64,000 bases of DNA, taken from Octopus sinensis (Eukaryota). Positions 1-54,741 of the stretch are shown here, piece by piece. The position numbers and the translations under genes are program-made. The notes beneath the pieces were generated by a model. That model made no database searches. It had not been told where the DNA came from and saw only the letters and a program-made list of their open reading frames with translations. The DNA lies in assembly GCF_006345805.1 (NCBI RefSeq), contig NC_043010.1, positions 29,946,001 through 30,010,000 on the forward strand, written 5' to 3'. How positions within the stretch are numbered: position 1 is the stretch's first letter; each line of letters opens with the position of its first letter.

Positions 1-1893
1 TGTAGGCCCCTACCCCTACCTGGAATTCTTCATTGTACCCTCACCTTACTGACAGCATCCCTCTACATGGCTTGTGCAGCTCTCACTAACCACTCATCTA
101 TCCCTAGTTTCCACATTGACCACCAAATCAGGGATTGGGGGACCCTGCTGAAGGCTTTCTCCATTTCAACGAAAGCCAGATGCAGCGGTTTATCTTTGGT
201 TAGGTATTTCTTCTACAGTTGTTTTACCAGAAATATAGCATCAGTGATGCTTTTCCCTGGCACAAACCTGAATTGCATCTCATCTAGACTGACTCTCCCC
301 CAAATTAATTGGGCTATGACCATCTCTGTGACTTACATTACCTGATCCAACAACTTGATACCTCTATAATTATTTGTATCTAAAGCATCACCTTTACCTT
401 TGCAGCAGTTGACTATGGTGCTGCTACACCACTCATTGGGTATGACTCCTTCATGCATCATCTGATTGACTATACAGGTGACTAGACTATAGCTGACACT
501 GTCAGATATTTTAAGTATTTCTGTGATGATTCCTAATGAGCCAGGGGCTTTCCCTGTCTTCATACTCTTAATTGCTTTATCTCCATCAATTCAGATAGCT
601 GGCCCCTCTGTTAGGTCAACATTCGGCAGACTCTCTTTCTCCCATTCATTTTCTTTATTGAGCTACCTTTCATAGTGGCATCTCCATGTCTCTCTCCTTG
701 CAGCCTCATTAAATGCAAGTGAGCCATCATCCATGTGGACACATTTCTCTCCTGATATCACGATTCTCTCTCACACACTGTCTTGCAACACAAAACACTT
801 CAAGTCTTTGGTCCTCATGATGCAGATCATTGGCAAATTTTTTCTTATCTCCTTCCCTTCTGGCTTCATAAACCTATCTCCAAGCTTCTCTTCTGGCAAT
901 CTGATACAATTCCCTGCTACCACCATTCTTCCAGTCCTTCCATGCATGTTTCTTTCCCCTAATGGCCCTGTCAACTAACTTGTTCCAACACCACATTATC
1001 TTAGGCCGAGAGGGGACTTTGCATCATCCACAGATCTAGTCAGTAGCCCTCAACAGGTTGTCCCATAGAAACCACCTGTTGTCTTCCACATCATGTGATG
1101 CTATATCCCCCTCTAATTTGTCAAAAGCTTCGAGTAATACATCTCTAAATTTCTGTCCACTCACAGGATCCTTAAGCTTCCAGACCCTTCTTCTACATGC
1201 TGGCCATCTTCTGGGCATCCATTTAGCCCTGATCCTGAAGTCGCTAACTACTTATCTATGTTGTGGGGTGAATTCTACACCTGGGAAAGTTTTGGCATTT
1301 ATACGTAGCCATCTTTCCCATTTCCTGGCAAGGATGTAATCAATTTGACTAGTGTGTCCATGAGATTGGTAGGGAAATAGGTGACTGGCAGTTTTCCTGA
1401 AGTTAGCATTACAAACCATAAGATCATTTGCATTGCAGAACTCCAGCAGCCTGGTTCCCTCCTCATTGCGGGAACCAAAACCATAGCCTCCATGGAAGCC
1501 CCCTGCATGTTGTCCAACAAGCCCACTGAAGACGCCAGCTACAAAGAGAACGTTCGTGTCATTCATCGATGAGGTAGTCTGCAAGAGGGTGTCATAAAAT
1601 TGGTCTTTCTGTTCATCAGGTTGCCCCAGCTGAGGGGCATAGGCTGAGATAATGGTTGCTAAACCATGTTGCAGCACTAATCTAATTTTAAGTATTCTAT
1701 CACAGATTCTGACTACCTCAATTACCTTATCAACCCATTTCTCTGCAAGAAGCATACCCACACCCAACACCCCATCAGTGTTCCCTGTCCAGAAAATCTT
1801 ATACCTATGTTCTTTACCTGTGAGGAACCTAGCAGAACATCCTCTCTACCTTACTTCTTGGATGCAGCACAAAGCTACACGTCTCCATTCAAG
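1..1893 (-). mobile_element. Decayed RTE-clade LINE (APE endonuclease to RT N-half), runs off the left edge of the window
   Basis: ORF 1252-1770 (VIEVVRICDRILKIRLV..IISAYAPQ..SQIDYIL) is APE-like; ORF 333-563 (MKTGKAPG..KGKGDALDTNNYRGIKLL) is RT start; 1-330 matches the RT of the copy at 38870-40787. Multiple frameshifts and stops. Confidence 0.93.
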
Positions 1894-3624: not shown

Positions 3625-4160
3625 GAAAGAAGACTGTCGTATATTTGTGTGTGTATGTGTCTGTTTGTACTCTCACCCTTGCTTATCAACTGATTTTGCT
3701 GTGTTTACATCCCCATAACTAAGCAGTTTAGCAAAAGAAACTGATAGAATGAGTACTAGGCTTACAAAGAAGAAATCCTGTGGTCAATTTTTTCAACTAA
3801 AGATGGTGCTCCAGCATGGCTGCGATCACATGACTGAAACAAGTAAAACAATAAAAAAACTACATCATTTTAATCCTGAGCAAGGCCAGGTATCTCAGCT
3901 AGTAATATATATATACATATATTAATGATGTATATGCTATTAATATATATGTGTATGCATGTGTGTGTGTATGTTTGTATCTGTATTTGTCTTCTCACTA
4001 TTGCTTGACAACCGATGTTGGTGTGTTTACATCCCCATAACTTAGCAGTTTGGCAAAAGAGACCGATAGAATAAGTACTAGGTTTATAAAGAATAAGTCC
4101 TGGGGTCGATTTGTTTGACTAAAGGCAGTGCATGGCTGCAGTCAAACAAATAAAAGAAAA
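3625..4160 (+). mobile_element. Two tandem SINE B 3' fragments (about 3625-3858 and 3965-4160)
   Basis: Both carry GTGTTTACATCCCCATAACT(T)AGCAGTT..GCAAAAGA..GATAGAAT..AGTACTAGG. Confidence 0.85.
3875..3902 (+). mobile_element. Helitron 3'-end remnant
   Basis: CCTGAGCAAGGCCAGGTATCTCAGCTAG|T is a CpG-decayed version of the hairpin+CTAG|T ends at 55840, 56373 and 58503. Confidence 0.6.
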
Positions 4161-4182
4161 GAATATATATATTTATAAGGAA

Positions 4183-5461: not shown

Positions 5462-5574
5462 AGATATCCTGAATTATATCTGTAATTATAGAAAATTAAA
5501 CTACATGTTTGGTAAAGAACAGAACTTCATTGCTATCAGTTTTCTGTGGATTTTGAATGTATAAAATAAATATA

Positions 5575-5955
5575 GATGCAGGAGTGGTTGTGTGGTAAGT
5601 AGCTTGCTAACCAACCACATGGTTCCGGGTTCAGTCCCACTGCGTGGCATCTTGGGCAAGTGTCTTCTGCTATAGCCCCGGGCCGACCAATGCCTTGTGA
5701 GTGGATTTAGTAGACGGAAACTGAAAGAAGCCTGTCGTATATATGTATATATATGTATGTATGTGTTTGTCCCCCTAGCATTGCTTGACAACCGATGCTG
5801 GTGTATTTACGTCCCTGTCACTTAGTGGTTCGGCAAAAGAGACCGATAGAATAAGTACTGGGCTTACAAAGAATAAGTCCCGGGGTCGATTTGCTCGACT
5901 AAAGGTGGTGCTCCAGCTAGGCCGCAGTCAAATGACTAAAACAAGTAAAAAAGAG
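5575..5955 (+). mobile_element. Full-length SINE family B
   Basis: tRNA-like head (GGAGTGGTTGTGTGGTAAG..GGGTTCAGTCCC), CORE-like CTTGGGCAAGTGTCTT, internal TA/TG run, tail ..ACAAGTAAAAAAGAG. Confidence 0.9.
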
Positions 5956-6607: not shown

Positions 6608-7657
6608 TTATAGTTGATTAACACCACCAGATTCTGGTAGGTTGTACTGGAAAACTTGATCCTTGTTTGATGATGGATTCACTTCAGCCAAGTTTGGCAT
6701 CATATGTGCTTTCTCATGACACTGTAGGATTGATTTTTGAGGGAAGACTTTTCCACAGACATTACATTCAAAGATTTTTTTGTTGCCATGTGTGCGTTTA
6801 TGAGTCTTGAGATTGCCTTTCTGGGAGAAATTCTTCCCACATATATCACAGGAGAATGGTTTCTCACCTGTATGAGTTCTGATGTGACTGAGTAGGTTAA
6901 TTCTTTGTGCAAACGCTTTGTCACATAAGGTGCAGACATATGGCTTGTGACATGCATGTGTGTGCTCATGGTTACGAAGGTGTGCACGCTGGCTGAATGC
7001 TTTTGAACAATGGGAACATTGAAATGGTCGCTCTCCAGAGTGTGTCCTTATATGGTTACTAAGATGATCCTTCTGGCTGAATGCTTTTGGACAGGTGGGA
7101 CATTTAAAAGGCCGTTCCCCTGTATGGGTGCGCTCGTGTACTTTGAGATGAGCTTTTTGGCTAAAAGACTTAAGACAAACTGAACATGCGTAAGGGCGGT
7201 CACCTGTGTGTGTCCGCTCATGGCTGCGCAAATGTGCTTTCTGAGCAAACACTTTCTGGCAGTAGACACAACTATGATGCTGTTGCCGGTCACTATTTCC
7301 GGAAAATGCACTGTGTTCATGATTTTGAAGGTTTGCTCGCCGACTAAAGCTTTTGCGGCAAATTTCACACTTGTAAGGTTTGCTGCTGTGACTTGCGACC
7401 TTGGCAGAAGTTTGCGACTCTGGTGCATTTAAATGTTCACGGTTATTCCGACACTGGTAGCCACCCTTGACTGAATTGTTTAAATAATGAGGGCAAGTGG
7501 GTTCATGGTGATGGTGGTGATGGTGGTGGTGGTGGTGATGGTAGCGTGAGTGATTGTTATCTTCAGGTTGTTGAAATGGCTTGTTGTTGACGTCATATCT
7601 GTACTGGTTATCCACAGAAGATGAACTTGGATAAACAGGTTGCATGTGAAACATCAT
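6608..7657 (-). CDS. C2H2 zinc-finger protein ZNF-A, 349 aa: His12 tract, 7 canonical fingers plus 1 atypical finger
   Basis: Intact ATG-to-stop ORF; CxxC-x12-HxxxH repeats with TGDRP/TGERP/SGERP/TGEKP linkers; in-frame TGA 45 nt upstream bounds the start. No KRAB, BTB or ZAD domain recognised. Confidence 0.96.
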   Translation of the reverse strand: MMFHMQPVYPSSSSVDNQYRYDVNNKPFQQPEDNNHSRYHHHHHHHHHHHHEPTCPHYLNNSVKGGYQCRNNREHLNAPESQTSAKVASHSSKPYKCEICRKSFSRRANLQNHEHSAFSGNSDRQQHHSCVYCQKVFAQKAHLRSHERTHTGDRPYACSVCLKSFSQKAHLKVHERTHTGERPFKCPTCPKAFSQKDHLSNHIRTHSGERPFQCSHCSKAFSQRAHLRNHEHTHACHKPYVCTLCDKAFAQRINLLSHIRTHTGEKPFSCDICGKNFSQKGNLKTHKRTHGNKKIFECNVCGKVFPQKSILQCHEKAHMMPNLAEVNPSSNKDQVFQYNLPESGGVNQL

Positions 7658-13421: not shown

Positions 13422-14878
13422 ATAATAATAATAATAATAAAAATATATATAGTTAATTCACACACACACTGAATGTAATAAGAATATAATTTATATATTT
13501 CTTTCTCAAAATCTGCAAATAAAAGAAATATAAAAATGTTGGTAATAATCTCCATCCCTCCGCCTAAACAATTCCAAAACCTCCTTCCCTCCATAAGATT
13601 TTTTTATATCTTCCAATCATACATCTTTTTATTAATTTGTTTCTGGAAATTTATAATTATTTTTGGAAACCAAATATTTTTTTCATAAATGAACGACTTT
13701 TTATTATGATTATATAATAAATAGAATTTAGTTAAAGCATTTAAATAATCCATCAATGAATTTCTCTTCAAAAATAAAATGTATTCAAGTAGGGAGGGGA
13801 AAGACAAATATCATGCTCCGGTTTTTCTCGTTGTCATCGTCAATTTTCGTCAATAATTTTGTAATTTATTTTCATTTAACTAATACAAAATGGAGTTCGA
13901 AATTAACTTTCAAAATGAACTAAAAACTACTTTTGCAAAATAAAATTAATATTAAATGATATTAAATTTAGTAAAACTTGATTTGGATTCCTTTCTCTCT
14001 GCAGCCAAAATAAAAAAAAAGCCAACGTGATCGAGCTGTTTAGTCTATCGAGATCTTAGAACTTAGAAATAAAATACGCTTTAACATCGATTAGTTAATC
14101 CAGTTTTAATACAGTGTAGTGGTTAATTAATTTTATAATAAAAAGGCGAGATTAGCTTGTATAGTTTGGAATAGAATGAGACTTGCGGAGTAAAAAATAA
14201 TTACGAATTAATATCATCTAATGCAAATTGTTCGCTTTTCTACCTGTGCCAAAAATATCGATTTCTTTCTTGGTTGGGTAACATACCGGTATAGGAAAGG
14301 TTATGGGTAATTGAATCAACCTTCGTTTAAGACAGGTATTCAAGTATAGGAATTGGCAGAATCGGTAGACCAACGGATAAATGCCAAATGGTATCTAACT
14401 ACGGCCCTTTACGTTCTGAGTTCAAATCCTGCTGAGATTAAAGTTGCCCTTCATCCTTGCGAGGCCATAAAATACAACTACCATTCGAGTACTCGATTTA
14501 GTAATACTATAATGGAATTTAAATAGATGAAAAAAACCCACAAAGGGGCTTCCATGTGGTTGCTGGCTCTTTTAGAAATCACTGTTATTAGAAAAGTAGA
14601 GAAAGATGCACTGAATTTGAAAGGACAAGAAGGCCATAACGGTAACACTTTGGTCATAGGTTTGCTTTGTCAGAGATGAATAATTTTACTCACTCCTAGA
14701 GAGATGGAAGGTAAAAGTGTCAACTAGGATTGAACTTTGAATATAGAGTGAATTAAATGTTGGATGCCATTTAGGGTGGTTCCATATAAATGAATAAGCC
14801 AGAGGATTATGCCAAATTTCTGTGTCTGCTTTGGAATGATGGCATGGAAAGCAGACGTTAAACGACGACGATGATGAT

Positions 14879-15170
14879 ATTATTTGTTGTCATAGTATCA
14901 CTCATGCTTTCATGAATCTGTTGATATAAAACCTTACATACTTTGAGAGCATAGGGTCATATTTGGTAGTATTGGTTTCCAGTTTTGGCAGAAGCAACTG
15001 TATGAAGCATTTGTCATAATTTATATTATTTGTTGTCATGGTATCACTCATGTTTTCATGAATCTGTTATAAAACCTTATATACTTTGAGAGCATAGGGT
15101 CAAATTTGGTAGTAATGGTTTCAAAAGTTTGGCAGAAGGATCTGTGTGGAGCATTTATCATAAATGATAT
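14879..15170. repeat. Local ~146-bp tandem duplication, with a third partial copy at 16558-16640
   Basis: ATTTGTTGTCATRGTATCACTCATG.TTTCATGAATCTGTT..AAAACCTTA.ATACTTTGAGAGCATAGGGTCA repeated. Confidence 0.9.
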
Positions 15171-16019
15171 TACTAGCAAATGTACCCATCTACAATGGAG
15201 GCATAAAATGAAGGAGGGATGCCTTAACAGCAGTATGTATTGAGAAATGTGTAAGTGGACTTGATAGATTACTGGATGATGTATAAGAGTAATCACATTA
15301 TTGTTGGTGATACAGAATTCTGTTGCAGCTATATGATGTGTTCGTGATCGACATATGATGAAATAGGCTCTCAGCCTCTGTATCATGAATGGTTATATGG
15401 ACCACTCCTAACGAAAGCCAGAGCTTCTTTCGACCACTACATAAAATGTATTAAGAAAAAAATGCTGTTTAGATATACTTTTATTTTAGTTGTTTACACT
15501 ATTTTATGCTTGTTTATACTTTTATATATTCAAAGTTCACAAATTTCCATATTTAAATTATGAATCATATTCCTTTTGATAATATCAATATGATTACAAA
15601 AACCTCTTTGTAGATGATACATTCTGTTTGGTTGACACTAATTTTCAAATTACTGGAGTCTGTTGCTCTACTCATAAATGGGCCTGTGTAAACATCGGAG
15701 TGGGTAAAAATACACCTACATGATCTAAAGTCTGGCCCTGTGCTTTGTTTGCTGTGAATGCATGAGCAGAATCATTAGGGTTGCAAAAGCTCAAACTTAC
15801 CTCTCACTGCTCTATGCAAATAATGTCTGGATGTTCTGGTACCATGGATTATTTTGATTGACAAAACTGAGATGTAAACTTCAGCCACTTTGATTAGCCA
15901 TTTCGAATCCTGCTTGAGACAGACACACTTCAATAACCACACACATTTTTTCCATTTCATTTTCACTATTAACCAACCTTGCAACCCACTTTGTATCTAA
16001 GATGGGGCCACAAACTATA

Positions 16020-18909: not shown

Positions 18910-19340
18910 GACAGCACCGGCCGAGCATGATCATTGCCAGGGATGCAGACTGACCCTCATGCCGGTGGCAGGTAAAAAGCACCATTTGAGCATGATCGTT
19001 ACCAGCGTCGCCTTACTGGCACTTGTGCTGGTGGTACGTGAAAAACAATATTCAAGTGAGGGTGTTGCCAGTGCCACTGGATTGGCTCCTGTGCAGGTTA
19101 CACATAAAAACATCATTTGAGCGTGGCCATTACCAGTACTGCCTGACTGGCCCTTGTGCCGGTGGCACATAAAAGCACCCACTACACTCTTGGAGTGGTT
19201 GGCATCAGGAAGGGCATCCAGTTGTAGAAACTCTGCCAGATCAGATTGGAGCCTGGTGCAGCCATCTGGCTCACCAGTCCCCAGTCAAACTATCCAACCC
19301 ATGCCAACACGGAATGTGGACGTTAAACAATGATGATGAT
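18910..19340 (+). mobile_element. 5'-truncated RTE, 3'UTR only
   Basis: Colinear with 40370-40787; ends GGACGTTAAACAATGATGATGAT. Shorter tails at about 14835-14880, 18380-18560 and 22460-22500. Confidence 0.88.
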
Positions 19341-19884
19341 ATTCTTTTGTAGTCCTATACGAGCTTATAAATATTTATTTTGCAATAAAATACTTACTGC
19401 GGAGAGACTTTTTGAACACCCTATAGAAGACACTTGTCCAAAGCGTTGTGCAGTAGGACTGAACTTGAAACCAAGTTACAGAATGAGCTTCTTAACTGCA
19501 CAGCCGTTCCTTAATAACTTTTTTTTCTTGCATTGTACAGAATTGTCTTCTATATAAGCTGCTGACCAATATTGCTAGGGTCAGGCCACTTCTTTTACTG
19601 GATTCAGTTATTGGATTGTGGCCATGCTGGGACACTGCATTTGAGGATTTTTAGTTAATCATATCAACTCCAAAAGAGTTCAGTCTCACATTTATTTTTG
19701 TAGACCAACAATTATCAATTTGGTTCAGTTGCATTTTTGACACAATACCAGTTTTTAGGTTATTTTGTTCAATTGGGTTTTGTTTGGTCATGATGAAATA
19801 TTACTTGGTAACAGGTGAGAGATGGCAACAAGAAGGCTATCAAATCATAGAATATCTGCCTCTTTAACTTCCATCCACTCCATA

Positions 19885-20271
19885 GGCGCAGGAGTGGCTG
19901 TGTGGTAAGTAGCTTGTTTACCAACCACATGGTTCCGGGTTCAGTCCCACTGCGTGGCACCTTGGGCAAGTGTCTTCTACTATAGCCTCGGGCCGACCAA
20001 AGCCTTGTGAGTGGATTTGGTAGACGGAAACTGAGAGAAGCCTGTCGTATATATGTATATATATATGCGTGTGTGTGTTTGTGTGTCTGACAACCGATGC
20101 TGGTGTGTTTATGTCCCCGTTACTTAGCGGTTCGGCAAAAGAGACCGATATAATAAGTACTGGGCTTACAAAAGAATAAGTTCCGGGGTCGAGTTGCTCG
20201 ACTAAAGGCGGTGCTCCAGCATGGCCGCAGTCAAATGACTGAAACAAGTAAAAAAAAAAAAAAAAAAAAAA
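19885..20271 (+). mobile_element. Young, near-consensus SINE B with an A22 tail
   Basis: Retains many CpGs in an otherwise CpG-poor region; A-run 20250-20271. Confidence 0.93.
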
Positions 20272-20922: not shown

Positions 20923-22275
20923 CTCTATAAGATGCACCAAGTGTAAGCTATGGACACATAAGAGATGCAGCAATGTCAAAGGAAGGCTAACTAGGAAGAT
21001 GGTTTTTGTATGTGGCAGATGCTCAGGAACAATAAACACTGAAAATGCTCTGAGACCAACTTCCGTCACTTTCCAGGGAGAAAAACTAGAAATAGTTGAT
21101 AGTTTCCGTTACCTAGGTGACCAAGTCAGCAGCGGGGGCGGGTGTGCTGAAAGTGTAACTGCTAGAGTAAGAATAGCTTGGGCAAAGTTCAGAGAGCTCT
21201 TACCTCTACTGGTGACAAAAGGCCTCTCGCACAGAGTGAAAGGCAGACTGTATGATGCGTGTGTACGAACAGCCATGCTACATGGCAGTGAAACATGGGC
21301 CGTGACTGCTGAGGATATGCGTAAGCTCGCTAGAAATGAAGCCAGTATGCTCCGATGGATGTGTAATGCCGGTACTCACACTCGGCAGAGTGTAAGTACC
21401 TTGAGAGAAAAGCTGGACCTAAGAAGCATCAGTTGTGGTGTGCAAGAGAGACGTTTGCGCTGGTATGGTCATGTGGCGAGAATGGATGAAGATAGTTGTG
21501 TGAAAAAGTGCCACACCCTAGCGGTTGAGGGAACCTGTGGAAGAGGCAGACCCAGGAAAACCTGGGACGAGGTGGTGAAGCACGACCTTCGAACTTTAGG
21601 TCTCACTGAGGAAATGACTAGAGACCGAGACCTCTGGAAGTGTGCTGTGCGCGAGAAGACCCGGCAGGACAAGTGAGTCCATAACCCGTGGCCTTCTACA
21701 TGGGATGGAGCCAGCCTACGTATGCATACCTTCCCTTCTTGGGACACAAAACTCTACTTGTGAAGACGTGATGAGGCAAGTGAGGATCAGAATCGAAATC
21801 GATCAATGGAAATTGCGGATGTGCTACCAGTGCCGGTGGCATGTCAAAACTCTGCTTGTGAAGACCCGTTGAGGCAAGTGACGATCAGAATCGAAATCGA
21901 TCAATGGAAATTGCAGATGTGTTACCAGTGCCGGTGGCATGTAAGAGAACTTTCCGTTTCGCGACCGTTGCCAGCACCGCCCCGTTTCGTGTCCGTTGCC
22001 AGCCTCGCCTGGCCCTCGTGCTGGTGGCACATAAAAAGCACCATCCGTTCGTGGCCGTTTGCCAGCTCTGTCTGGCACCAGTGCGGGTGGCACGTAAAAA
22101 GCACCCACTACACTCACGGAGTGGTTGGCGTTAGGAAGGGCATCCAGCCGTAGAAACACTGCCAGATTTGACTGGGCCTGATGAAGCCTTCTGGCTTCAC
22201 AGACCCCAGTAGAACCGTCCAACCCATGCTAGCACGGAAAACGGACGCTAAACGATGATGATGATGATGATGATG
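20923..22275 (+). mobile_element. Young 5'-truncated RTE LINE: PHD finger, RT C-terminus (open to stop at 21676), 3'UTR, (GAT)n tail
   Basis: IRCTKCKLWTHKRC..FVCGRC..DSFRYLGD..LHGSETW..RRLRWYGHV..RGRPRKTW with no stops; tail AAACGATGATGATG. Confidence 0.96.
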
Positions 22276-22699
22276 TTCCGGTGTCAATCTATAGCTATAT
22301 TGTTCACTTTCTCCTCATCTGTCTTACTTTTCCCTATCACCCCTCTCCCTTCTTTGACGTCTGAAATTACACACAAACACCTAATTAAAGTCACAAACAT
22401 GTTCACCCACTTAAAATTTCATACACACACTTTTAGCTATATTTGTTCTACCTGATCTAAGGAAGCATGGAGAAGTGGACATTAAACCAATGATGATGAT
22501 ATATAAATATATATGCAGGCATCATTGTGAACAATAAATGTTCTTTACCCTTGAACTATTTCAGACAATCAACCAACCTTCCTCTTACATTCCACACAAA
22601 AGAAAAGCCCATTACTAAACCTCAAAGGACACACTACCTACATCCAGATAGTCAACCACCGCCATACCTGGAAGAGAATCATTAAACAAGTAAAAGATA

Positions 22700-25266: not shown

Positions 25267-25895
25267 AGGGGGACATGATAAGGGAAAAGTGTTAGAGTTT
25301 GTGTGTAAATAAAAAGAATGACAAGACAGATACAAAAAGAAAGAATATGGAATATGAAAAACAAAAGGAATGTGAATGTGTATGAAAGAGATAGACAGAG
25401 AAAAAGAGTGTGAATGAATAAGATTCATAAAGAGAAAAATGCATGTGTGTTTATGGGATAAATTGGACATGCTCAGAGGAGACCAAATATACCACTAACC
25501 ACTCTTTTGAATCAGGACTATAAAGGTAGAGAACCTTATTGTGTTGAAGGAGTTTAGTGGAAGAGGTGTATTTCATGAGTAAATGAGGATCTAGTCAGAT
25601 GTATGTAGGATACAGTGAAGTTGTTGCCTTGCTATGGGTAGTGAAGGTTGAGTGGGTAGTGTTGAGAACATAACATCTGAAAAGGTGTGGCAGACATTTT
25701 ATGGGAATGAAAGAATATGTTGAAGAAGAAGGGAGAGGAAGAGAGAGAGTATAGACATGAGTATGAAAGGAAAAGTATGTGTGTGATACTGAGGAGAAAA
25801 AAACACTGTGAAATTACAAAAAAAAAGAGAAAGTGTACAGAGAAATAGTAAGGAGGGAGTGAGAAAATTAGAAAGGAAAGGGGAAAATATAGAAT

Positions 25896-27119
25896 TTAAT
25901 TGTGCACATCTGTGTGATAGACGTCCATCTGCTGTACAGCAGGGTGGTAAGCAACACTGATCTGAGGAGCAAGATTAGTATGGTAGAGTACATTGCCTGG
26001 ATGTGGTTGTACAGTGATGTGATGGGGCACATTGGTTAAGGTAGTTATAGTCGTTGCATTGCCATTGCCATGATGAGCAGCGGCAGCTGTCACTGCAACT
26101 GGCTCTCCATTTTGTTCAGTTTCTACAGTCACAGCAGTTGAAGTCCCTTCTTCTGCAACAACACTGATACGAGGTACACAACTCAACTTTCTGACCCCTT
26201 TATTTGGCCGCTTGTGTCTTTCCAGATGGTCAATCCGTGTAAAGGCATAGCCACACAGTTCACACTTGAAAGGCCTCTCTCCAGAGTGAATGCGTTTATG
26301 GACACGTAGGTGATCACGCCGGGAAAATGCTTTGTTGCAGACATCACAGTTGAACAATTTAGGGCGTGAGTGTATCTTATGGTGAGTGGAGAGCTTGCCT
26401 GTTGTTGAGAATCCTTTACCACAAACATCACAAACATATGGCATGACTGGAATATGCCCAGATGATGCAGAAAACTGACCTTGCTTTTGAAGACCAATGC
26501 CTTGTGATTGGTTGTATTCTCGCCAACATTCTTCACAGTCAAATGGTGGATTCGATGTTACTGGTGCAATCTGGTTGGAGATAACTTGATGATGTTGTTG
26601 TTGTTGCTGAGGATAAACAAGATCACTGGACCTCACTGCATTACTAGTATGTAGGTTTGCATTGTTATTCTTATTACTCTTTTTGACCCGATTTTTCTTC
26701 ACAGGAGATGCTTGGGGTGTGGCAATTATTTGGTTGTTGATGTTGTACACTTTGCCACTGTGTTGTGTACGTGTGTGCCGTACGAGGTAATCTTTCCGTG
26801 AAAATGCACACCCACATATATTGCACTTGAATGGGCGTACCCCAGTATGTATCCGCTCATGCACAGTGAGATGTGATTTCTGGGAGAAACTGCGATCACA
26901 GGTCAAACATGTAAAGAGCTTCTCACCGCGATGAGTGCGTTTATGACGCTCCAGATTGTGACGGCTGAAAATTTTGCCACAAATATTGCATACTGCTGTC
27001 TTATCAGTGACAGATGCAGTGGAAGCAGTTGTATTCAGGTGAACTATAGTGGCAGCTGTTTCTAAATCCTGCACATCACAATGGATCAAAGTAGCAGTAC
27101 TGGGCATAAGAGTATTCAT
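25896..27119 (-). CDS. C2H2 zinc-finger protein ZNF-B, about 407 aa from the first ATG: two triads of fingers separated by an N/Q-rich linker
   Basis: The track start at 27152 is TTG; the first ATG is 27119 (MNTLMP). A strong acceptor TTTTTTTGTTTTCTAAG| opens the exon at 27163 with the frame still open, so an upstream coding exon is possible. Confidence 0.94.
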   Translation of the reverse strand: MNTLMPSTATLIHCDVQDLETAATIVHLNTTASTASVTDKTAVCNICGKIFSRHNLERHKRTHRGEKLFTCLTCDRSFSQKSHLTVHERIHTGVRPFKCNICGCAFSRKDYLVRHTRTQHSGKVYNINNQIIATPQASPVKKNRVKKSNKNNNANLHTSNAVRSSDLVYPQQQQQHHQVISNQIAPVTSNPPFDCEECWREYNQSQGIGLQKQGQFSASSGHIPVMPYVCDVCGKGFSTTGKLSTHHKIHSRPKLFNCDVCNKAFSRRDHLRVHKRIHSGERPFKCELCGYAFTRIDHLERHKRPNKGVRKLSCVPRISVVAEEGTSTAVTVETEQNGEPVAVTAAAAHHGNGNATTITTLTNVPHHITVQPHPGNVLYHTNLAPQISVAYHPAVQQMDVYHTDVHN

Positions 27120-28189
27120 TGGTGACAAGGTAGAAAATCCAGAAACATACAAATAATTGAGATCTTAGAAAACAAAAAAAACTGACCCCTGGCTTTCTAT
27201 AGTGAAACGGGGTTAAATATTATCTTCATAGTAATTAGTTTAGTCTAATGAAAATAAAATGTTCATTAGGTTGCTTTCTTCCCTAAATTACTGGTTAGTC
27301 ACACTCTGTATAATTTTTCTTTATAAAACTTCATATATATAGCTTTTAAAAATAGTTTATAACAAAATGCTGGCAGCTACCATAACTAAAGATTAAAAAA
27401 AAAAAGTAGTAGTAGTAGTATCAGCAAACATTAACAGGAGTTAGTTGACTTCGTGAATTGAATAACATGACAACACAAATAGAACCTCTTCCAAATAGTC
27501 TGCTTTGATTTCATTCCTCTCAGCTATCTTAAATAGTTGTGACAAGAACAAGAGCACAACTCTGTAGAAACATGAGAGTGGATTAGCTCAAAGTTGGTAA
27601 TAGATATGTGTGTCTATACGTATATGTATGTATATATATATATATACATACACACACAGAGGAAAGAAGGTAGTCAATATGTAGTGTTGGAGATAAAGGC
27701 ACTTGGGTGACGTGGAGCAGCTAATATTTTGGTAATACACTTCAGCACAGCATCAACCTACAAAGATAAAAATAACATTTCTATAAATCAAATGAATGTC
27801 AAACAGTTTTGTGTGTGTGTATATAAATATATGTAATAGCCGCAATTATATGTATATACACCATTCAGAAGTTGAGAGAATAGCTTAAGGCCAACATTTA
27901 CTTTTATTGTGACTACTTCTACATCCTTATAACTAATCCAATTCATACACATAAATTAACCAGTAGGATCAAAGCAAAGTAGAGATGGTCTGTACCAGCA
28001 ATAAGTACAAACTGCTGAAAAGTGGAGAAAATTGAGGGGAGATATGTCAGACGGGCACCCTACTGTCCCATCCTCACCTTGAGACTCCTAAGTTTTCAAC
28101 AACAAAGATTATGAGCTTGCTCCTAAGGATCCATGTGGAAAAATATGGGAGATTGTGGTTCTGAAAAAATATATATGTCTGTGTTTACC

Positions 28190-29606: not shown

Positions 29607-30150
29607 CTATTCTATTCAGTCATTTCTGATGATTGTTAAATTTACCTTTCCATCTTTGGCATGAAACTGTTTGATAATAAATTGGCTGTCACAAGAACAA
29701 TAATAATAATCCTTACTACTATAGGCACAAGGCATATATATATATAGGTGCAGGAGTGGCTGTGTGGTAAGAAGCTTGCTTCCCAACTACATGGTTCTGG
29801 GTTCAGTCCCATTGCGTGGCACCTTGGGCAAATGTCTTCTACAATAGCTTTGGGCCGACCAAAACCTTGTGAGTGGATTTGGTAGATGGAAAGAAGCCCA
29901 TCGTATATATATATATATATATGCATGTGTGTGTGTGTATGTTTGTGTCTGTGTTTGTCTCCCCAACATCACTTGACAACCAATGCTGGAGTATTTACAT
30001 CCCTGTAACTTAGCAGTTCGGCAAAAGAGACTGATAGAATAAGTACTAGGCTTACGAAGAATATGTTCTGGGATCGATTTGCTTGACTAAAGGCAGTGCT
30101 CCAGCATGGCCGCAGTCAAATGACAGAAACAAAAAAAAAAGAAAAAAAAA
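28190..30150. mobile_element. SINE cluster: B 3' half(+) 28190-28390, three A(-) fragments 28795-29325, B head(-) 29403-29560, full B(+) 29747-30150
   Basis: Alignment to family copies. Confidence 0.82.
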
Positions 30151-31173: not shown

Positions 31174-32428
31174 GGTTGGATAAAATAATGGAAACACCTT
31201 AAAATTTCAAGCAAATTATTTTAATATGGGGTAGGACCACCTTTGGTAGTAATTACAGTCTGAATTCTATGAGTTATGGACTCGTACAAAGTATGAATTG
31301 TTTCCAGTGGAAATTTTGTCCGCTCTTCAGCTATAACAGTCTCCGGTTCTTGTAGTGATGAAGGTGGAGGATATAAACTCCTTACTTGTTTTTCTAAAAT
31401 GCACCATAAATGTTCAATAATATTGAGATCTGGGGACTGTGGTGGACAGATAAGATGTTAAACCTCACTAGAATGTTCTTTGTGCCATTTAGTAACAACT
31501 TTTGCTGTGTGAATTGGTGCATTATCATCCTGAAAGATTGTGTTTCCCTCCAGAAACAGTTCTGCGACCACAGGATGAATTCGATCAGATAAAATGCTTA
31601 GTCTTGACTATTATTTCTGCCATGAAGGAAAACTATTGGGCCAGCAGATTTCCAAGATATAGCCCCCCACCAGATCATCACAGATCCTCTTCCATGTTTA
31701 ACAGTTGGAAGAAAGCAGTCTGGGTCAAATACTTCTTTTGGCTGTCTCCACATGTATACTTGGCTGGTGGTCAGAAATAAGGTAAAGAATTACTCGTCTG
31801 AGAAAATAACATTCTTCCACCGCTCTAGGGACCAATTCTCTAGGCTTGTACTCCACTCTAAATGCTTTGCAATGTTTGTTTTTGAAAGTAGTGGTTTTCT
31901 GATTGCAACCCTCCCATGAAATCTGGCTTTGTGCAGCTCCCAGTGAACAATTTTTGTGGAAACTGGGTTCTCGAGGTGGCCATTAAGCTCTGCAGAAATT
32001 GTGGGAGGTGTACTTTTGTGATCCTTTCTAACAATTTGTGAAAAAGTCCAATGGTCCCTATCTGAAAGTATTGGTTTTCTTCTGGATTTTTGTTTCAACA
32101 AAGAGGTTTTTCTGTGTTTCTCAAAGGCTGTTATTACTTTTGAGACAGCATTTCTTGATACACCAAACATTTTGGCTGTTTAGGTTATGCTAGCACCTAC
32201 CATATGAGTGCCAGCAATTTGACCTCTTTGAAAGCCCAATAGATCTGTCATTTTAATGAATTTTAATTACCTTTTTCTGATGATATCTGAAAAGAAACAG
32301 CAATTTTAGCAAAACATTAAGCAACACTAATAATAAATCAAAACACAAAAATAAACAAGCTTTTGATGGTTTTATAGATATTTCAAAATTATGATGCTAG
32401 GGCTTTCCATTATTTTGTCCAACCCCTG
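31171..32428 (-). mobile_element. Full-length decayed Tc1-family DNA transposon
   Basis: TIRs (CA)GGGGTTGGAYAAAATAATGGAAA at both ends; transposase MTDLLGFQRGQI(32251)..VSRNAVSK..RKPLLS..WKNVIFSDE with stops; sits in a TA run. Confidence 0.93.
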
Positions 32429-38869: not shown

Positions 38870-40787
38870 GCATATGCAGTTTGGGTTCGTGCCAGGGAAA
38901 AGCACCACTGATGCTATATTTCTGGTAAGATAGCTGCAGGAGAAATACCTAGCCAAAGATAAACCTCTGTACCTGGCTTTTGTTGACATGGAGAAAGCCT
39001 TGGACAGGGTCCCCCCCCCCCGATCTCTTATCTGGTGGTTAATGAGGAAACTAGGGATAAATGAATGGTTAGTGACAGCTGTGAAAGCCATGTACAGGGT
39101 CGCTGTCAGTAAGGTGAGAGTTGGCAATGACTACAGTGAAGAATTCTGGGTAGAGGTAGGGGTCCACCAAGGTTCAGTCCTCAGCCTCCTCCTATTTATC
39201 ATAGTCCTCCAGGCAATAACAGAGAAATTCAAGACAGCTCCTCTATGCTGATGGCCTTGCTCTAGTTGCTGAGTCACTATCAGAACTAGAGATGTTTCAG
39301 GTGTGGAAGCAAGGATTAGAATCAAAGGGCCTTAGAGTCAATCTAGCTAAAACCAAAGTCCTAATAAGTAGGAAGGCAGACAAACCACAGGTCTCTTCAG
39401 GTAGATGGTCTTGCTCGATCTGTAGAAAAGGTGTAGGTAGAAACTCTATAAGATGTACCCAGTATAAGCTATGAACTCATAAGAGGTGCAGCGATATCAA
39501 ATGAAGGCTAACTGGGAAGATAGTTTTTATATGTGGCAGATGCTCAGGAGCAATAAACACTGAAAATGTGCAGAGAACAACTTCTGCCACATTCCAGGGT
39601 GAAAAACTAGAAGCAGTTGATAGCTTCCATTACCTAGGTGACCAAGTCAGTAGGGAGGTGGGGTGGGGGTGCACTGAAAGTGTAGCTACGAGAATAAAAA
39701 TAACCTGGGCAAAGTTCAGAGAGCTCTTACCTCTGCTGGTGACAAAGGGACTCTCACACAGAGTAAAAGGTAGACTGTATGATGCATGTGTACGAACTGT
39801 CATGCTACATGGCAGTGAAAAATGGGCTGTGACTGCTGAGGACAGGTGTAAGCTTGCAAGGAATGAAGCCTGTATGCTCCAATGGATGTGTAATGTCAGT
39901 GTGCATACTCTACAGAGTGTAAGTACCCTGAGAGAAAAGTTGGACCTTAGAAGCATCAGTTATGGTGTGCAAGAGAGGCGACTGTGCTGGTATTGTCATG
40001 TGGTGAGAATGGATGAGGATAGCAGTGTGCAAAAGTTCCACACTCTAGCGGTTGAGGGAACCTGTGGAAGAGGTAGACCCAGGAAGACCTGGGATGAGGT
40101 GGTAAAGCACAACCTTCAAACATTAGGCCTCAGGGAGGCAACGACTAGTGACCAAGACCTTTGGAAATATGCCGTGCTTGAGAAGACCCTGCAAGCCAAG
40201 TGAAACCATAACCCATGACCTATGCCAGTGGTGTAACCAGCCCACTTATGTGTACCTTTCCTTCATTGGACACTAAACTCTGCTTGTGAAGACCTGTTGA
40301 GGGAAGTGGAATTGAAATCAAAATCAAATTCAATGACTGGCATCTATGCCAGTGGAGTGCTAAGAGAACCATCCGAGCATGATCGTTGCCAGAGCAGCTG
40401 ACTGTCACGCAAAAAGCACCATTTGTGTGTGATCGTTACCAGTGTCACCTTACTGGCACTTGTGCCGGTGGCATGTGAAAAGGCATTTAAGCAAGGTCGT
40501 TGCCAGTGCTGCTGGACTGGCTCCTGTGCAGGTGGCACATAAAAAAAACACCATTTGAGTGAGGCCCTTGCCAGTACCGCCTGACTGGCCCTCGTACCAG
40601 TGGCATGTAAAAGCACCCACTATACTCTCAGAGTGGTTGGCGTTAGGAAGGGCATCCAACTGTAGAAACTCTGCCAGATCAGATCGGAGCCTGGTGCAGC
40701 CATCTGGTTCACACGTCCTTAGTCAAATCGTCCAACCTATGCTAGCATGGAAAGCGGACGTTAAACAATGATGATGATAGTGATGAT
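38870..40787 (+). mobile_element. 5'-truncated RTE LINE: RT with PHD insert, 3'UTR, (GAT)n tail
   Basis: MQFGFVPGKSTTDAIF..AFVDMEKALDRV..GVHQGSVLS..LYADGL..NLAKTKV..CSIC..YLGD..RGRPRKTW*; several stops and frameshifts. Confidence 0.95.
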
Positions 40788-51569: not shown

Positions 51570-52410
51570 CTTTTCTTTAATCTACGCCACATTTCTTGTA
51601 GACGTCGACTCCAATTCACTTCAGGCTGTGCGAAATGACATTGTGCACGCAAATGTTCTGTGTCCTGCATAAATTCACGGACACGTACTATGTGGGGCTG
51701 ACCATCAGGATCGAACGACCCCACGGGGTTAAAAAAAAAAGTTCAGTAACGTGTTGATCTGTTCGACGAAAACAATGGCCTGCGAAATTTAGCCGTCTTT
51801 GATCATCTATGTTTGATTATCTGGCTGACGGGCGGTAAAGATCCATATAGTGACTTGTTTGATGACTAAGAGATGTTAAAGGCTATGACAGAAGTCGAAT
51901 GTATGTGCCATCTAGTGAGCACTGTTGTGCCACCGTAAGAGGACAATATTCAGAGTCGTAGACGCGAACAGATTCTACTGTAGCACGAAACAGGCGTAGT
52001 TTTAGGTCAGTGACAGTTGTGGTGCTTCCCATACTTTCCATAACTTATCGGATGCTGGCCGTTTTATCGCTTTACGAATGTTAACATCTGTACTGGCAGA
52101 GCGAATACGAGAATTTAGGTAACAGAAATCGGCAACTGATTCAATGGACCCTGAAGAAAGCGTAAGGTCATCCACACCAGCATTTTTACAAATGATTATC
52201 TTTGTCTTTGAGTGGTTTATTGAGAGACTAACTTCAATGGCAGCAATCTTCGGGTTTGTGAGGAGAGTTCGAGCATTTGTGATTATATGTGAGACGAGTA
52301 CGACGTCATGTTGGAAGTCGAGGTCGGTGAGGTATGATCCTGGACGACGTGAACCTTGGCGGGGACAGACAGTTATGCCCAGCTCAGATACCATAACGTG
52401 TCGTAGTACC
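51570..52410 (-). mobile_element. LINE RT C-terminal fragment (RTE/RTEX-like, a different family from the PHD-RTE)
   Basis: LTDLDF..INHSKTK..DFCYLNS; LFRATVES..LDGTYIRLL..RRLNFAGHCFR. Confidence 0.85.
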
Positions 52411-52522
52411 TAATCAAAGACTATAAAGAAAAGGAAAGTAGCTAAGGTTATCCCCCTGGAGAACTCTTGTGTTAAATACGAATGTATTGGTGTCTCTGTC
52501 AGGGGTGCTTACAAAACTTTTG

Positions 52523-52912
52523 CATCATCATCATCATCATCTGCAACATCGTCATTGTCCTCCTCGTCCTCTTCGTCCTTCTCATCGTCATCGTCGTCGT
52601 CGTCGTCCTCCTCCTCCTCCTCACCAACACCACTACACCACCACCACCACTACAACCACCACCACCACCACCACCACCACCACCACCACCACCACCACCA
52701 CCACCACCACCACCACAACCACCACCACACCACCACCACCACCACCCCACCACCACCACCACCACCACCACCACCACAACCACCACCACAACCACAACCA
52801 CAACCACCACCACCACCACCACCACCACCACCACACCACCACCACAACCACCACCACCACCACCACCACCGCCACCACCACTACCACCATCATCATCATC
52901 ATCATCATCTCT
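52523..52912. repeat. Compound trinucleotide microsatellite (CAT/CGT/CCT then long (CAC/AAC)n)
   Basis: Directly visible, about 390 bp. A shorter (CAC)n(CAA)n tract lies at 61260-61350. Confidence 0.97.
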
Positions 52913-53162
52913 CCTGTCTTCAGTAATTACTCTCAGTCTGCTTTATATTCCTCTCAACCCCTTTCACTCTCCATCCACCCATCTTTTCCCTTTCGTCTTA
53001 TACCGTTTTTTTCCCTTTTCCCCTCTTAAGTAGTATCTGTCACTCCATCTCCCTACTTTTGCTATCAAACTAGATCGACCCCTCTTTTCACCAATAATCT
53101 CTAGCCTTTCAATGTATTAAAAAATTAAAAACAAAAAAAAAAATTAATATAAATACATGCAT

Positions 53163-54483: not shown

Positions 54484-54741
54484 TATATATATATATATAT
54501 ATGTATACACACACACATACAAAGATAAATTGATAGATTTATCTTTGTATGTGTGTGTGTGTATATATATAACACCCTAATGGGAGCCTTAACTGCCAAA
54601 TTTTATTCATTTCTTTTATGATCCAAAACTAGGTCAAAAGTACTGAATAGATTTTTATGAAATTTGGAAATTATATTCTATGCATAAGGGCCATAAACCC
54701 CATGACAATTCATATATTTTTATTGTTGGCAAGACTAGAGC

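What the first reader, a model, noticed from the sequence alone, without database searches (positions are those of the whole stretch)
6700..7380. ZNF-A recognition helices predict a site matching the RTE retroposon 3' tail
Helices (-1..+6): F2 QKAHLRS, F3 QKAHLKV, F4 QKDHLSN, F5 QRAHLRN, F6 QRINLLS, F7 QKGNLKT. In the canonical code Q-1/H3 reads NGA (engineered modules QAGHLAS=TGA, QLAHLRA=AGA, QSGHLTE=CGA) and Q-1/N3 reads NAA (QRANLRA=AAA). Antiparallel binding predicts 5'-NAA NAA NGA NGA NGA NGA-3'. The RTE tail here is AAA CGA TGA TGA TGA (22250-22264; variants at about 14860, 19325, 40763), fitting F6-F2; F7 and F1 do not fit. Hypothesis: a KRAB-less ZNF targeting the locally dominant LINE and any SINEs sharing its tail, analogous to vertebrate KRAB-ZNFs. 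Plain (TGA)n, (AGA)n or (GGA)n microsatellites fit almost as well.
Basis: inference. Interest (0 to 1): 0.72.

Follow-up and report, generated by a model that had tools for sequence, protein, structure and literature searches.

The report
Octopus zinc-finger gene, speculative LINE-tail target
An intact octopus zinc-finger gene has unusually regular DNA-reading residues, and their textbook-predicted target does resemble the tail of a local jumping gene, but plain simple repeats fit equally well and nothing shows that the protein binds either.

Summary
The sequence facts hold. ORF 6608-7657 (-) of Octopus sinensis encodes a 349-aa C2H2 protein with the six helices quoted. It also has an unlisted eighth finger (QKSILQC), and F1 is degenerate.

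They end 5'-truncated copies of one endonuclease-type LINE family. [quoted passage not shown] Gln sits at -1 in seven fingers in a row, with His3 in four and then Asn3 in two. None of 120 other poly-ZNFs comes close.

The code-level fit is slightly better than reported:
- The two CGA-type tails score 11/12 against NAA NAA (NGA)4.
- An O. vulgaris copy scores 12/12.

The fit is not specific, however:
- Only 2 of 7 (NGA)4 loci in the window are LINE tails.
- The best site for all eight fingers is a GA-rich tract, not a transposon.
- Position 6 favours AGA over TGA.
- The dominant local SINE has an A-rich tail.
- No effector domain or ortholog was found.

The idea that octopus ZNFs target transposons is already published in aggregate for this species (Wells 2023), and that paper stresses low prediction accuracy. 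Verdict: an ordinary member of the octopus ZNF expansion carrying an untested, testable hypothesis.

The parts
6608..7657 (-). ZNF-A open reading frame: 349 aa, intact, with no Pfam domain other than C2H2 fingers
   Evidence: The exact product is called in NCBI assembly GCA_006345805.1, record CM016872.1, which is O. sinensis.
7307..7375 (-). F1, a degenerate finger with helix RRANLQN. It reads HEHSAF (no second His at H-X3-H) and is followed by a 5-aa-longer linker to F2.
   Evidence: found only by the loose pattern; zf-C2H2_jaz and zf-met match residues 95-116
6956..7276 (-). F2 to F5, four canonical fingers joined by TG(D/E)RP or SGERP linkers. Helices are QKAHLRS, QKAHLKV, QKDHLSN and QRAHLRN (Q-1/H3), predicted to read (NGA)4.
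   Evidence: modules checked; a run of four Q/H fingers was not seen in 120 other poly-ZNFs
6788..6940 (-). F6 and F7, helices QRINLLS and QKGNLKT (Q-1/N3), predicted to read NAA NAA. F6 is preceded by the non-canonical linker THACHKPY.
6704..6772 (-). It follows the non-canonical linker THGNKKIF.
7505..7540 (-). His12 tract in the N-terminal region, which holds no recognised domain
   Evidence: (tandem-repeat hit 7506-7542)
20924..22277 (+). 5'-truncated LINE copy: the C-terminal part of the RT with a PHD-like insert, about 600 nt of 3' UTR built from 98-bp and 63-bp repeats, and the tail AAA CGA (TGA)6 at 22250-22273
38874..40787 (+). Second copy of the same LINE (RT to tail), with tail AAA CAA (TGA)3 TAG TGA TGA at 40763-40786
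18950..19343 (+). Third copy, 3' UTR only, with tail AAA CAA (TGA)3 at 19325-19339
14836..14880 (+). 45-bp fragment from the extreme 3' end of the same LINE, with tail AAA CGA CGA CGA TGA TGA at 14860-14877
36..1770 (-). Diverged relative of the same LINE (63-79% aa identity). It carries an AP-endonuclease-like part (1252-1770) and the start of the RT, then runs off the window.
   Evidence: The endonuclease assignment rests on my reading of the motifs; Pfam gave no hit.
25722..25745 (+). GA-rich tract GAAGAAGAAGGGAGAGGAAGAGAG. It is the best site in the window for the full eight-finger two-base code (14/15). It is not a transposon and lies about 150 bp 3' of ZNF-B.
52522..52910 (-). Low-complexity block holding (TGA)n, (GAC)n and (GAG)n runs. 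It contains 3 of the 7 (NGA)4 loci in the window and none of them is linked to a LINE.

Best explanation
ZNF-A is an ordinary, intact member of the lineage-expanded, KRAB-less C2H2 poly-zinc-finger repertoire of Octopus sinensis.

It most likely binds double-stranded DNA through the canonical fingers F2 to F7, possibly F8, docked antiparallel in the major groove. Gln is at -1 in all seven fingers. Position 3 is His in F2-F5 and Asn in F6-F7. The expected site is therefore a purine-rich, 3-bp-periodic sequence of the type 5'-NAA NAA NGA NGA NGA NGA-3'.

In this genome such sequence occurs in simple repeats and GA-rich tracts. It also occurs in the AAAC(A/G)A(TGA)n end of one LINE family. On this reading the LINE tails are one subset of many candidate sites, not a demonstrated or dedicated target.

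Shown here: the gene, the fingers, the periodicity of the helices, the tails, and the code-level fit. Inferred: DNA binding, the motif, and any target class. Unknown: the effector function.
For: - The ORF is intact, with seven canonical fingers at an exact 28-aa spacing. Pfam zf-C2H2 scores far above its threshold and no other domain appears.
- Published engineered modules support Q-1/H3 reading NGA and Q-1/N3 reading NAA.
- The array is unusually periodic. Among 1154 fingers of 120 other poly-ZNFs, Q/H is the commonest pair but makes up only 7.6%. No protein there has more than 3 Q/H fingers in a row, whereas ZNF-A has 4. ZNF-A also has 6 consecutive Q-1/(H or N)3 fingers against a maximum of 3.
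- The fingers are near saturation at third codon positions, except for the pair F4-F5. The pattern is therefore not left over from a recent internal duplication.
- The candidate sites are mostly simple sequence. There are 7 (NGA)4 loci and 2 of them are LINE tails. The best eight-finger site is GA-rich and not a transposon.
- Octopus ZNF expansion, and an aggregate enrichment of predicted ZNF motifs in transposons, are already published (PMC12988792; PMC10547256).
Against: - There are no binding data of any kind.
- Recognition-code predictions for natural poly-ZNFs are often wrong. Only 5% of predicted human KZNF motifs matched ChIP-exo motifs.
- The non-canonical linkers F5-F6 and F7-F8 may break contiguous reading.
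- Two results hint at more than a generic simple-repeat preference: the perfect 12/12 match at the LINE junction in O. vulgaris, and the fact that only the real finger order produces it.
Confidence: 0.45

Rival explanations
1. ZNF-A is a dedicated binder of the LINE 3' junction plus tail, AAAC(A/G)A(TGA)n. It marks or represses this LINE family and any SINEs that borrow its tail, as a KRAB-less analogue of vertebrate KZNFs or fish FiNZ-ZNFs.
For: - All four tails rank within the top 44 of about 128,000 positions for the six-finger code. Two of them are among the five best sites.
- The O. vulgaris copy gives a 12/12 match, AAA CAA (TGA)4.
- Only the real finger order, out of 15 permutations, gives a perfect LINE-tail hit.
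- The tail and the roughly 38 nt before it are strongly conserved, even in a hydrozoan relative. They would therefore be a target the element cannot easily mutate away from.
- An aggregate enrichment of predicted ZNF motifs in transposons has been reported for octopus.
Against: - The probable ancestral tail (CGA, found in 3 of 6 cephalopod-type copies, including the metagenome relative) mismatches one finger in every register.
- F8 does not fit.
- Position 6 (N6 in F4 and F5) predicts AGA, not TGA.
- Non-transposon simple repeats score as well or better.
- At 11/12 or better, other finger orders that start with NAA hit as many tails.
- The dominant SINE here has an A-rich tail.
- No repressor domain or motif was found.
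- No ortholog or selection data could be obtained.
- A 3'-end site would sit on mostly dead, 5'-truncated copies.
Confidence: 0.13
2. The code-based prediction is simply wrong for this protein. Like many natural poly-ZNFs, it uses a subset of fingers, with context effects, to bind a non-periodic motif unrelated to either tails or microsatellites.
For: - Predicted and measured motifs agree poorly for natural ZNFs.
- There are two non-canonical linkers, THACHKPY and THGNKKIF.
- F8 has an uninterpretable I3/C6 helix, and F1 is degenerate.
Against: Q-1/H3 and Q-1/N3 are among the best-behaved pairs of the code (modules). Four of the fingers are joined by canonical linkers. The periodicity has been kept despite saturated synonymous sites, which suggests it matters.
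Confidence: 0.25
3. The protein acts mainly on RNA or on other proteins rather than on DNA. One example would be binding the (UGA)n-tailed LINE RNA.
For: F1 matches the dsRNA-binding-type profiles zf-C2H2_jaz and zf-met. A His12 tract and low-complexity termini are present.
Against: Those profile hits are generic for C2H2 fingers. The TGE(K/R)P-linked arrays with Q, H and N at the base-contacting positions are the classic DNA-reading architecture.
Confidence: 0.07

Closest known systems
Octopus lineage-specific C2H2 zinc-finger expansion (Albertin et al. 2015, as summarised in PMC12988792)
   Same: A tandem C2H2 array in an octopus genome, with no KRAB, encoded in one ORF and sitting among SINE and LINE debris. 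A second ZNF gene lies 18 kb away on the same strand.
   Different: Nothing about it stands outside the family except the unusually periodic set of recognition helices. Whether it lies in one of the large tandem ZNF clusters could not be judged from 64 kb.
Vertebrate KRAB-ZNFs (for example the ZFP809 and ZNF91/93 type of transposon repressors)
   Same: A poly-C2H2 array whose predicted site occurs in a retroelement. The proposed logic is a host factor recognising a constrained cis-element of the element.
   Different: It has no KRAB domain (tested). There is no known co-repressor link, no binding data and no evidence of rapid helix evolution. KRAB itself is confined to vertebrates (my background knowledge), so its absence here carries no information.
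KRAB-less metazoan ZNFs proposed to target transposons: zebrafish FiNZ-ZNFs and the aggregate octopus prediction (Wells et al. 2023, PMC10547256)
   Same: This is exactly the same idea, applied to an octopus genome. A later review (PMC12988792) names the species as O. sinensis. All ZNF ORFs with at least 5 fingers had motifs predicted (ZiFRC) and compared with a transposon consensus library, and an enrichment was found.
   Different: That study reports no individual octopus ZNF-transposon pair. It warns that many predicted motifs are simple repeats or homopolymers. ZNF-A has no FiNZ-like conserved N-terminal domain.
Engineered Barbas-type zinc-finger modules (QAGHLAS=TGA, QLAHLRA=AGA, QRANLRA=AAA, RKDNLKN=AAG)
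   Same: ZNF-A's helices share the base-contacting residues at -1 and 3 with these modules.
   Different: The modules were selected in a Zif268/Sp1C framework with fixed neighbouring fingers. ZNF-A differs at positions 1, 2, 5 and 6. By analogy with N6 modules (RSDHLTN=AGG, RKDNLKN=AAG), F4 and F5 would read AGA rather than TGA.
Stringent-type LINEs whose RT recognises a 3' stem-loop plus a short tandem repeat (for example eel UnaL2, and RTE or CR1 partners of SINEs; Ohshima review PMC3747384)
   Same: The tail-bearing element ends in a conserved 3' block of about 38 nt with a predicted stem-loop, followed by (TGA)n instead of poly(A).
   Different: Clade membership (RTE versus others) was not established. 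The pairs in the predicted stem are invariant, so there is no covariation support.

Membership tests
C2H2 (Kruppel-type) poly-zinc-finger protein | Repeated C-X2-4-C-X12-H-X3-5-H units | tested here: met
   Seven exact C-X2-C-X12-H-X3-H units start at residues 130, 158, 186, 214, 242, 270 and 298. F1 fails the second-His rule.
C2H2 (Kruppel-type) poly-zinc-finger protein | Pfam zf-C2H2 / zf-H2C2_2 score above the gathering threshold | tested here: met
   PF00096 scores 118 bits against a cut-off of 25.2. PF13465 scores 140 bits against a cut-off of 40.
C2H2 (Kruppel-type) poly-zinc-finger protein | Conserved TGEKP-type inter-finger linkers | tested here: met
   Four of the six linkers between canonical fingers are canonical: TGDRP, TGERP, SGERP and TGEKP. 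F5-F6 (ACHKP) and F7-F8 (GNKKI) are not.
KRAB-ZNF | N-terminal KRAB domain (PF01352) | tested here: not met
   No KRAB hit at E<=0.01. The stop-to-stop segments of 45 aa or more in the 7 kb upstream on the same strand looked low-complexity or SINE-derived. I judged this by eye and did not scan them against a domain library.
KRAB-ZNF | Binding to a transposon family, with TRIM28/SETDB1-dependent silencing | not testable with these tools
   This requires binding and chromatin data.
Transposon-targeting metazoan ZNF in the sense of Wells et al. 2023 | Predicted motif matches a transposon consensus better than non-repetitive or shuffled controls | tested here: inconclusive
   LINE tails are 2 of the 5 best six-finger sites and one O. 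vulgaris copy scores 12/12. However, only 2 of 7 (NGA)4 loci are tails and the best eight-finger site is not a transposon. ZiFRC and FIMO at genome scale were not available.
Transposon-targeting metazoan ZNF in the sense of Wells et al. 2023 | Lineage-specific gene with adaptive change at the base-contacting residues | not testable with these tools
   No ortholog could be retrieved. The full-length search was swamped by generic ZNFs, the N-terminal word search found nothing, and the N-terminal phmmer search was swamped by F1.
RTE-clade LINE (the element that carries the tail) | Single ORF with an N-terminal AP endonuclease followed by an RT | tested here: inconclusive
   RVT_1 is present in the O. 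vulgaris copy and in relatives. In a diverged copy at 36-1770 (-), an endonuclease-like segment sits directly upstream of the RT, but Pfam did not call it. No full-length copy was seen.
RTE-clade LINE (the element that carries the tail) | RT phylogeny places the element inside the RTE clade | not tested
   No reference RT set was available offline. The literature reports RTE-class LINEs with 3' UTRs of about 600 nt in Octopus (PMC9115989), which is consistent but is not proof for this family.
RTE-clade LINE (the element that carries the tail) | 3' end made of a short tandem repeat rather than poly(A) | tested here: met
   (TGA)3-7 ends all 7 copies examined, including the metagenome and Hydractinia relatives.

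The most novel reading that the evidence does not exclude
ZNF-A has been shaped to read the constrained 3' junction of an ancient LINE lineage, AAAC(A/G)A followed by (TGA)n, which sits directly after a 3' block conserved from cnidarians to cephalopods. If so, it would be the first concrete ZNF-retroelement pair in a mollusc. It would be an example of convergent, KRAB-independent, sequence-specific transposon recognition aimed at a cis-element the LINE needs for its own reverse transcription.
Probability: 0.12. Interest if true: 0.7.

Novelty: new member of a known kind. Interest (0 to 1): 0.3.

Why it matters
If the pairing were real, the proposed arms race between transposons and the very large octopus ZNF repertoire would gain its first named, testable ZNF-target pair. 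So far that idea rests only on aggregate statistics.

It would also show a host factor aimed at a LINE's own priming site, in an animal that lacks KRAB. As it stands, the locus is one more octopus ZNF gene. Its predicted site is dominated by simple-repeat-like sequence, which is exactly the class of prediction the published genome-wide study flags as unreliable.

The value of this check is threefold. The sequence facts are now solid. The hypothesis is sharpened to the junction register and the CAA-versus-CGA variants. The controls any experiment would need are named.

Tried and rejected
1. A full-length homolog search returned 7540 generic poly-ZNFs at 34-52% identity, mostly vertebrate. No cephalopod ortholog could be picked out.
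2. A word search with the N-terminal 137 aa found no candidate at all.
3. A phmmer search of the N-terminal 129 aa against 1.84 billion representatives was swamped by multi-finger proteins matching F1. It gave no ortholog information. Helix conservation across octopods therefore could not be tested.
4. An exact-sequence lookup found the product only in the O. sinensis assembly.
5. Wells et al. supplementary files: the octopus bed and motif files are not among the 200 files held.
6. Petrosino et al. supplements: no RTE-2_OV protein motif was found. Only transcripts containing the tail turned up.
7. A literature search for a LINE clade with a PHD-like insert found PHD reported only in ORF1 of CR1-like elements. 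The clade remains open.
8. Pfam on the LINE fragments in the window gave only a weak PHD hit.
9. ARAGORN found no tRNA-like SINE heads. The SINE was identified by alignment instead.
10. Refinements using position 6, by either the Choo-Klug table or module analogy, did not single out the tails.
11. Pseudogene was considered and rejected, because the ORF and seven fingers are intact.
12. Recent internal finger duplication was considered and rejected as the cause of the periodicity, because third codon positions are near saturation except between F4 and F5.
13. Upstream exons carrying an effector domain were looked for by eye only, and nothing suggestive was seen.
Full report
**Where the window comes from.** The exact 349-aa product of ORF 6608..7657 (-) is a called gene on NCBI assembly GCA_006345805.1, record CM016872.1, at about 29.95 Mb. 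A paper on the O. vulgaris genome identifies that accession as Octopus sinensis (Li et al. 2020). The window is 62% A+T and full of microsatellites and retroposon debris.

**The gene.** The ORF is intact, with an in-frame stop 13 codons upstream of the first ATG. Pfam finds only C2H2-finger families, far above threshold. It finds no KRAB, BTB, SCAN or other domain.
- Seven canonical C-X2-C-X12-H-X3-H fingers start at residues 130 to 298 with an exact 28-aa period.
- An eighth helix, QKSILQC, was not listed.
- The first finger (RRANLQN) is degenerate. After the first His it reads E-H-S-A-F, so the H-X3-H second His is missing. Its linker to F2 is 5 aa too long. Its failure to fit any site is therefore not informative.
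- Linkers F2-F3, F3-F4, F4-F5 and F6-F7 are canonical (TGDRP, TGERP, SGERP, TGEKP).
- F5-F6 (ACHKP) and F7-F8 (GNKKI) are not. The F5-F6 break falls exactly where the fingers switch from His3 to Asn3.
- The N-terminal 95 residues hold a His12 tract (7505-7540) and no recognised domain or repressor motif.

**Is the helix pattern more than chance?** Yes.
- I examined 1154 fingers from the 120 poly-ZNFs returned by the homolog search. That set is, if anything, biased towards ZNF-A-like words.
- Q-1/H3 is the commonest pair but makes up only 7.6% of fingers. Q-1/N3 makes up 3.9%.
- No protein in the set has more than three consecutive Q/H fingers, or more than three consecutive Q-1/(H or N)3 fingers. 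ZNF-A has four and six.
- The finger units are only 21-46% identical at third codon positions, except F4-F5 at 61%.
- The periodicity is therefore not the residue of a recent internal duplication. It has probably been maintained.

**The code.** In the canonical Zif268 docking model (my background knowledge), position -1 reads the 3' base, position 3 the middle base and position 6 the 5' base. The N-terminal finger sits at the 3' end of the site.
So is AAG=RKDNLKN, which resembles F1.
- CGA=QSGHLTE was not found in those tables and rests on my memory.
- The prediction 5'-NAA NAA NGA NGA NGA NGA-3' for F7 to F2 is correctly derived.
- Position 6 adds weak information. N6 in F4 and F5 points to a 5' A, by analogy with RSDHLTN=AGG and RKDNLKN=AAG. 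S6 in F2 fits TGA.
- The refined guess is closer to TAA TAA AGA AGA (A/T)GA TGA than to a pure TGA run.

**The tails.**
- 22250 AAA CGA (TGA)6
- 14860 AAA CGA CGA CGA TGA TGA
- 19325 AAA CAA (TGA)3 TAT
- 40763 AAA CAA (TGA)3 TAG TGA TGA

Three of them end clear copies of one repeat family that share several hundred bases of 3' UTR. The fourth (14836-14880) is a 45-bp 3' stub.

Two copies carry the C-terminal part of a reverse transcriptase. Its relatives have RVT_1 plus a PHD-like Cys-rich insert. A more diverged relative at 36-1770 (-) has an endonuclease-like segment directly upstream of the RT.

The element is therefore an endonuclease-type LINE with a microsatellite tail. Published work describes RTE-class LINEs in Octopus with 3' UTRs of about 600 nt rich in microsatellite (PMC9115989). 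That is consistent, but I did not place this RT in a phylogeny, so 'RTE' remains unverified.

**How good is the match?**

| Pattern tested | Result |
|---|---|
| Five-finger pattern (F6 to F2) | Exact at 14861 and 22251, plus one non-transposon site; 3 hits against 0.09 expected |
| Six-finger core, exact | No hit in the window |
| Six-finger core, one mismatch or fewer | 5 hits against 0.44 expected: two LINE tails, a GA-rich tract at 25726, and two overlapping sites in a low-complexity block at 52.56 kb |
| Six-finger core, ranking | All four tails within the top 44 of about 128,000 positions |

Shifted by one triplet, the CAA variant reads F7=AAA, F6=CAA and F5 onward=TGA. A copy of the same LINE in O. 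vulgaris (L002, GCA_951406725.2) ends AAA CAA TGA TGA TGA TGA. That is a perfect 12/12 match.

As a control I permuted the order of the two NAA and four NGA fingers, giving 15 arrangements. Only the real order gives a perfect LINE-tail hit. At 11/12 or better, however, several orders beginning with NAA hit as many tails. That is mild support, roughly a 1-in-10 coincidence.

**Why the match is not specific.**
- Exact (NGA)4 is the site of the canonically linked F2-F5 block. It occurs at 31 positions in 7 loci, against 1.3 positions expected. Only 2 of those loci are LINE tails. The others are GGA/GAG runs at 10.9 and 11.05 kb and three runs in the 52.5-52.9 kb low-complexity block.
- With all eight fingers, the best site in the window is GAAGAAGAAGGGAGAGGAAGAGAG at 25722 (14/15). 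It is not a transposon. The tails score 10-12 of 15.
- Position-6 refinements do not lift the tails above other sites.
- CGA tails occur in the window (2 copies) and in a 66%-identical LINE on a metagenome scaffold. The CAA form is plausibly the CpG-decayed version. The likely ancestral, active-element tail therefore mismatches one finger in any register.
- The excess over shuffles mainly reflects simple repeats, which dinucleotide shuffles destroy.
- The commonest retroposon in the window is a tRNA-derived SINE with at least 5 copies. It ends in an A-rich tail, not (TGA)n. The extension to 'SINEs sharing its tail' therefore finds no example here.

**What is already known.**
- The octopus C2H2 expansion and its temporal coincidence with transposon bursts are well described (summarised in PMC12988792).
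- Wells et al. 2023 (PMC10547256) predicted motifs for all octopus ZNF ORFs. PMC12988792 names the species as O. sinensis. They found enrichment of matches in a transposon consensus library.
- The same paper reports that only 5% of predicted human KZNF motifs match ChIP-exo motifs. [quoted passage not shown]
- The general idea is therefore published. The specific ZNF-A and LINE-tail pair is new but rests on the class of prediction that paper flags as weakest.

**What could not be done.**
- No ortholog of ZNF-A could be retrieved. Helix conservation and selection are therefore untested.
- No genome-wide scan was possible.
- No binding or expression data exist in the tools.

**Verdict.** The most likely reading is an ordinary octopus poly-ZNF whose preferred DNA, if the code holds, is 3-bp-periodic purine-rich sequence. 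LINE tails are one subset of that sequence class. I rate the dedicated LINE-tail hypothesis at about 0.12-0.13. It is cheap to test with DAP-seq or EMSA using the probes listed under the next steps.

**An aside worth recording.** The roughly 38 nt before the tail, CCGTCCAACCCATGCTAGCA(C/T)GGAAA(A/G)CGGACG(C/T)TAA, are almost identical in four sources:
- O. sinensis
- O. vulgaris
- a metagenome scaffold
- the hydrozoan Hydractinia symbiolongicarpus, whose LINE protein is only 51% identical

In Hydractinia the block forms the last codons of the ORF, and (TGA)6 follows 8 nt after the stop. The block can fold into a two-helix stem-loop, but the pairs are invariant, so covariation gives no support. 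This points either to strong cis-constraint on the LINE's 3' end or to horizontal transfer.

Noticed in passing
window 22215-22277, 40728-40787, 19288-19343; L002 5773-5826; L003 1983-2036; L004 4372-4437: The roughly 38 nt before the (TGA)n tail are nearly identical between octopus LINE copies, a metagenome relative and a Hydractinia (cnidarian) LINE whose protein is only 51% identical. In Hydractinia the block forms the last codons of the ORF. In octopus, about 600 nt of repeat-built 3' UTR separates the stop codon from the block. It contains the 14-nt palindrome CCATGCTAGCATGG and a predicted two-helix stem-loop, but no covariation supports the fold. The cause is either cis-constraint or horizontal transfer.
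   Followed up: partly
window 20930-21030; L002 4500-4640; proteins P0122 and P0127: The RT of this LINE family carries a PHD-like Cys-rich insert (CxxC...CxxCxxWxHxxC...CxxC). It lies between RT motif 6 (GLxVNxxKxKV) and motif 7 (FxYLGD). I found no description of this arrangement in the papers searched.
   Followed up: partly
window 25896-27152 (-): A second intact C2H2 gene (ZNF-B, 418 aa) has two separated groups of three fingers with quite different helices (QKSHLTV, RKDYLVR, TTGKLST, RRDHLRV, RIDHLER). It lies 18 kb upstream of ZNF-A on the same strand. The best eight-finger ZNF-A site, a GA-rich tract at 25722-25745, lies about 150 bp past its stop codon.
   Followed up: no
window 5572-5954, 19882-20256, 29744-30142, 3642-4174, 62262-62702 (-): A tRNA-derived SINE has at least 5 copies, with internal (TA/TG)n and an A-rich tail (...GACTGAAACAAGTAAAAAAGAAAA). 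It is the most frequent retroposon in the window. ARAGORN does not call its head as a tRNA.
   Followed up: partly
window 54737-55280: A tandem array of 16 copies of a 34-bp unit (AGATCGATAAAATGACTTAGCGGTTCGCCAAACG), with 78% matches between copies.
   Followed up: no
window 14874-15172: A 143-bp tandem duplication (2.1 copies, 86% matches) begins directly at the end of the 45-bp LINE tail stub.
   Followed up: no
window 31790-32170 (-): A fragment of a Tc1/mariner-type transposase (HTH_Tnp_Tc3_2, E=4.6e-11).
   Followed up: no
window 52469-53033: A block of about 500 bp of triplet low-complexity sequence (CAC, CAT, TCC and TCG runs) is open in three + frames. It holds most of the non-transposon (NGA)4 matches on its minus strand. 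A separate LINE RT fragment lies just upstream at 52002-52394 (-).
   Followed up: no
window 6941-6955 (-), residues 235-239: The non-canonical linker THACHKPY lies exactly at the boundary between the four His3 fingers and the two Asn3 fingers. This suggests two sub-arrays (F2-F5 and F6-F7) that may not read contiguous DNA.
   Followed up: no
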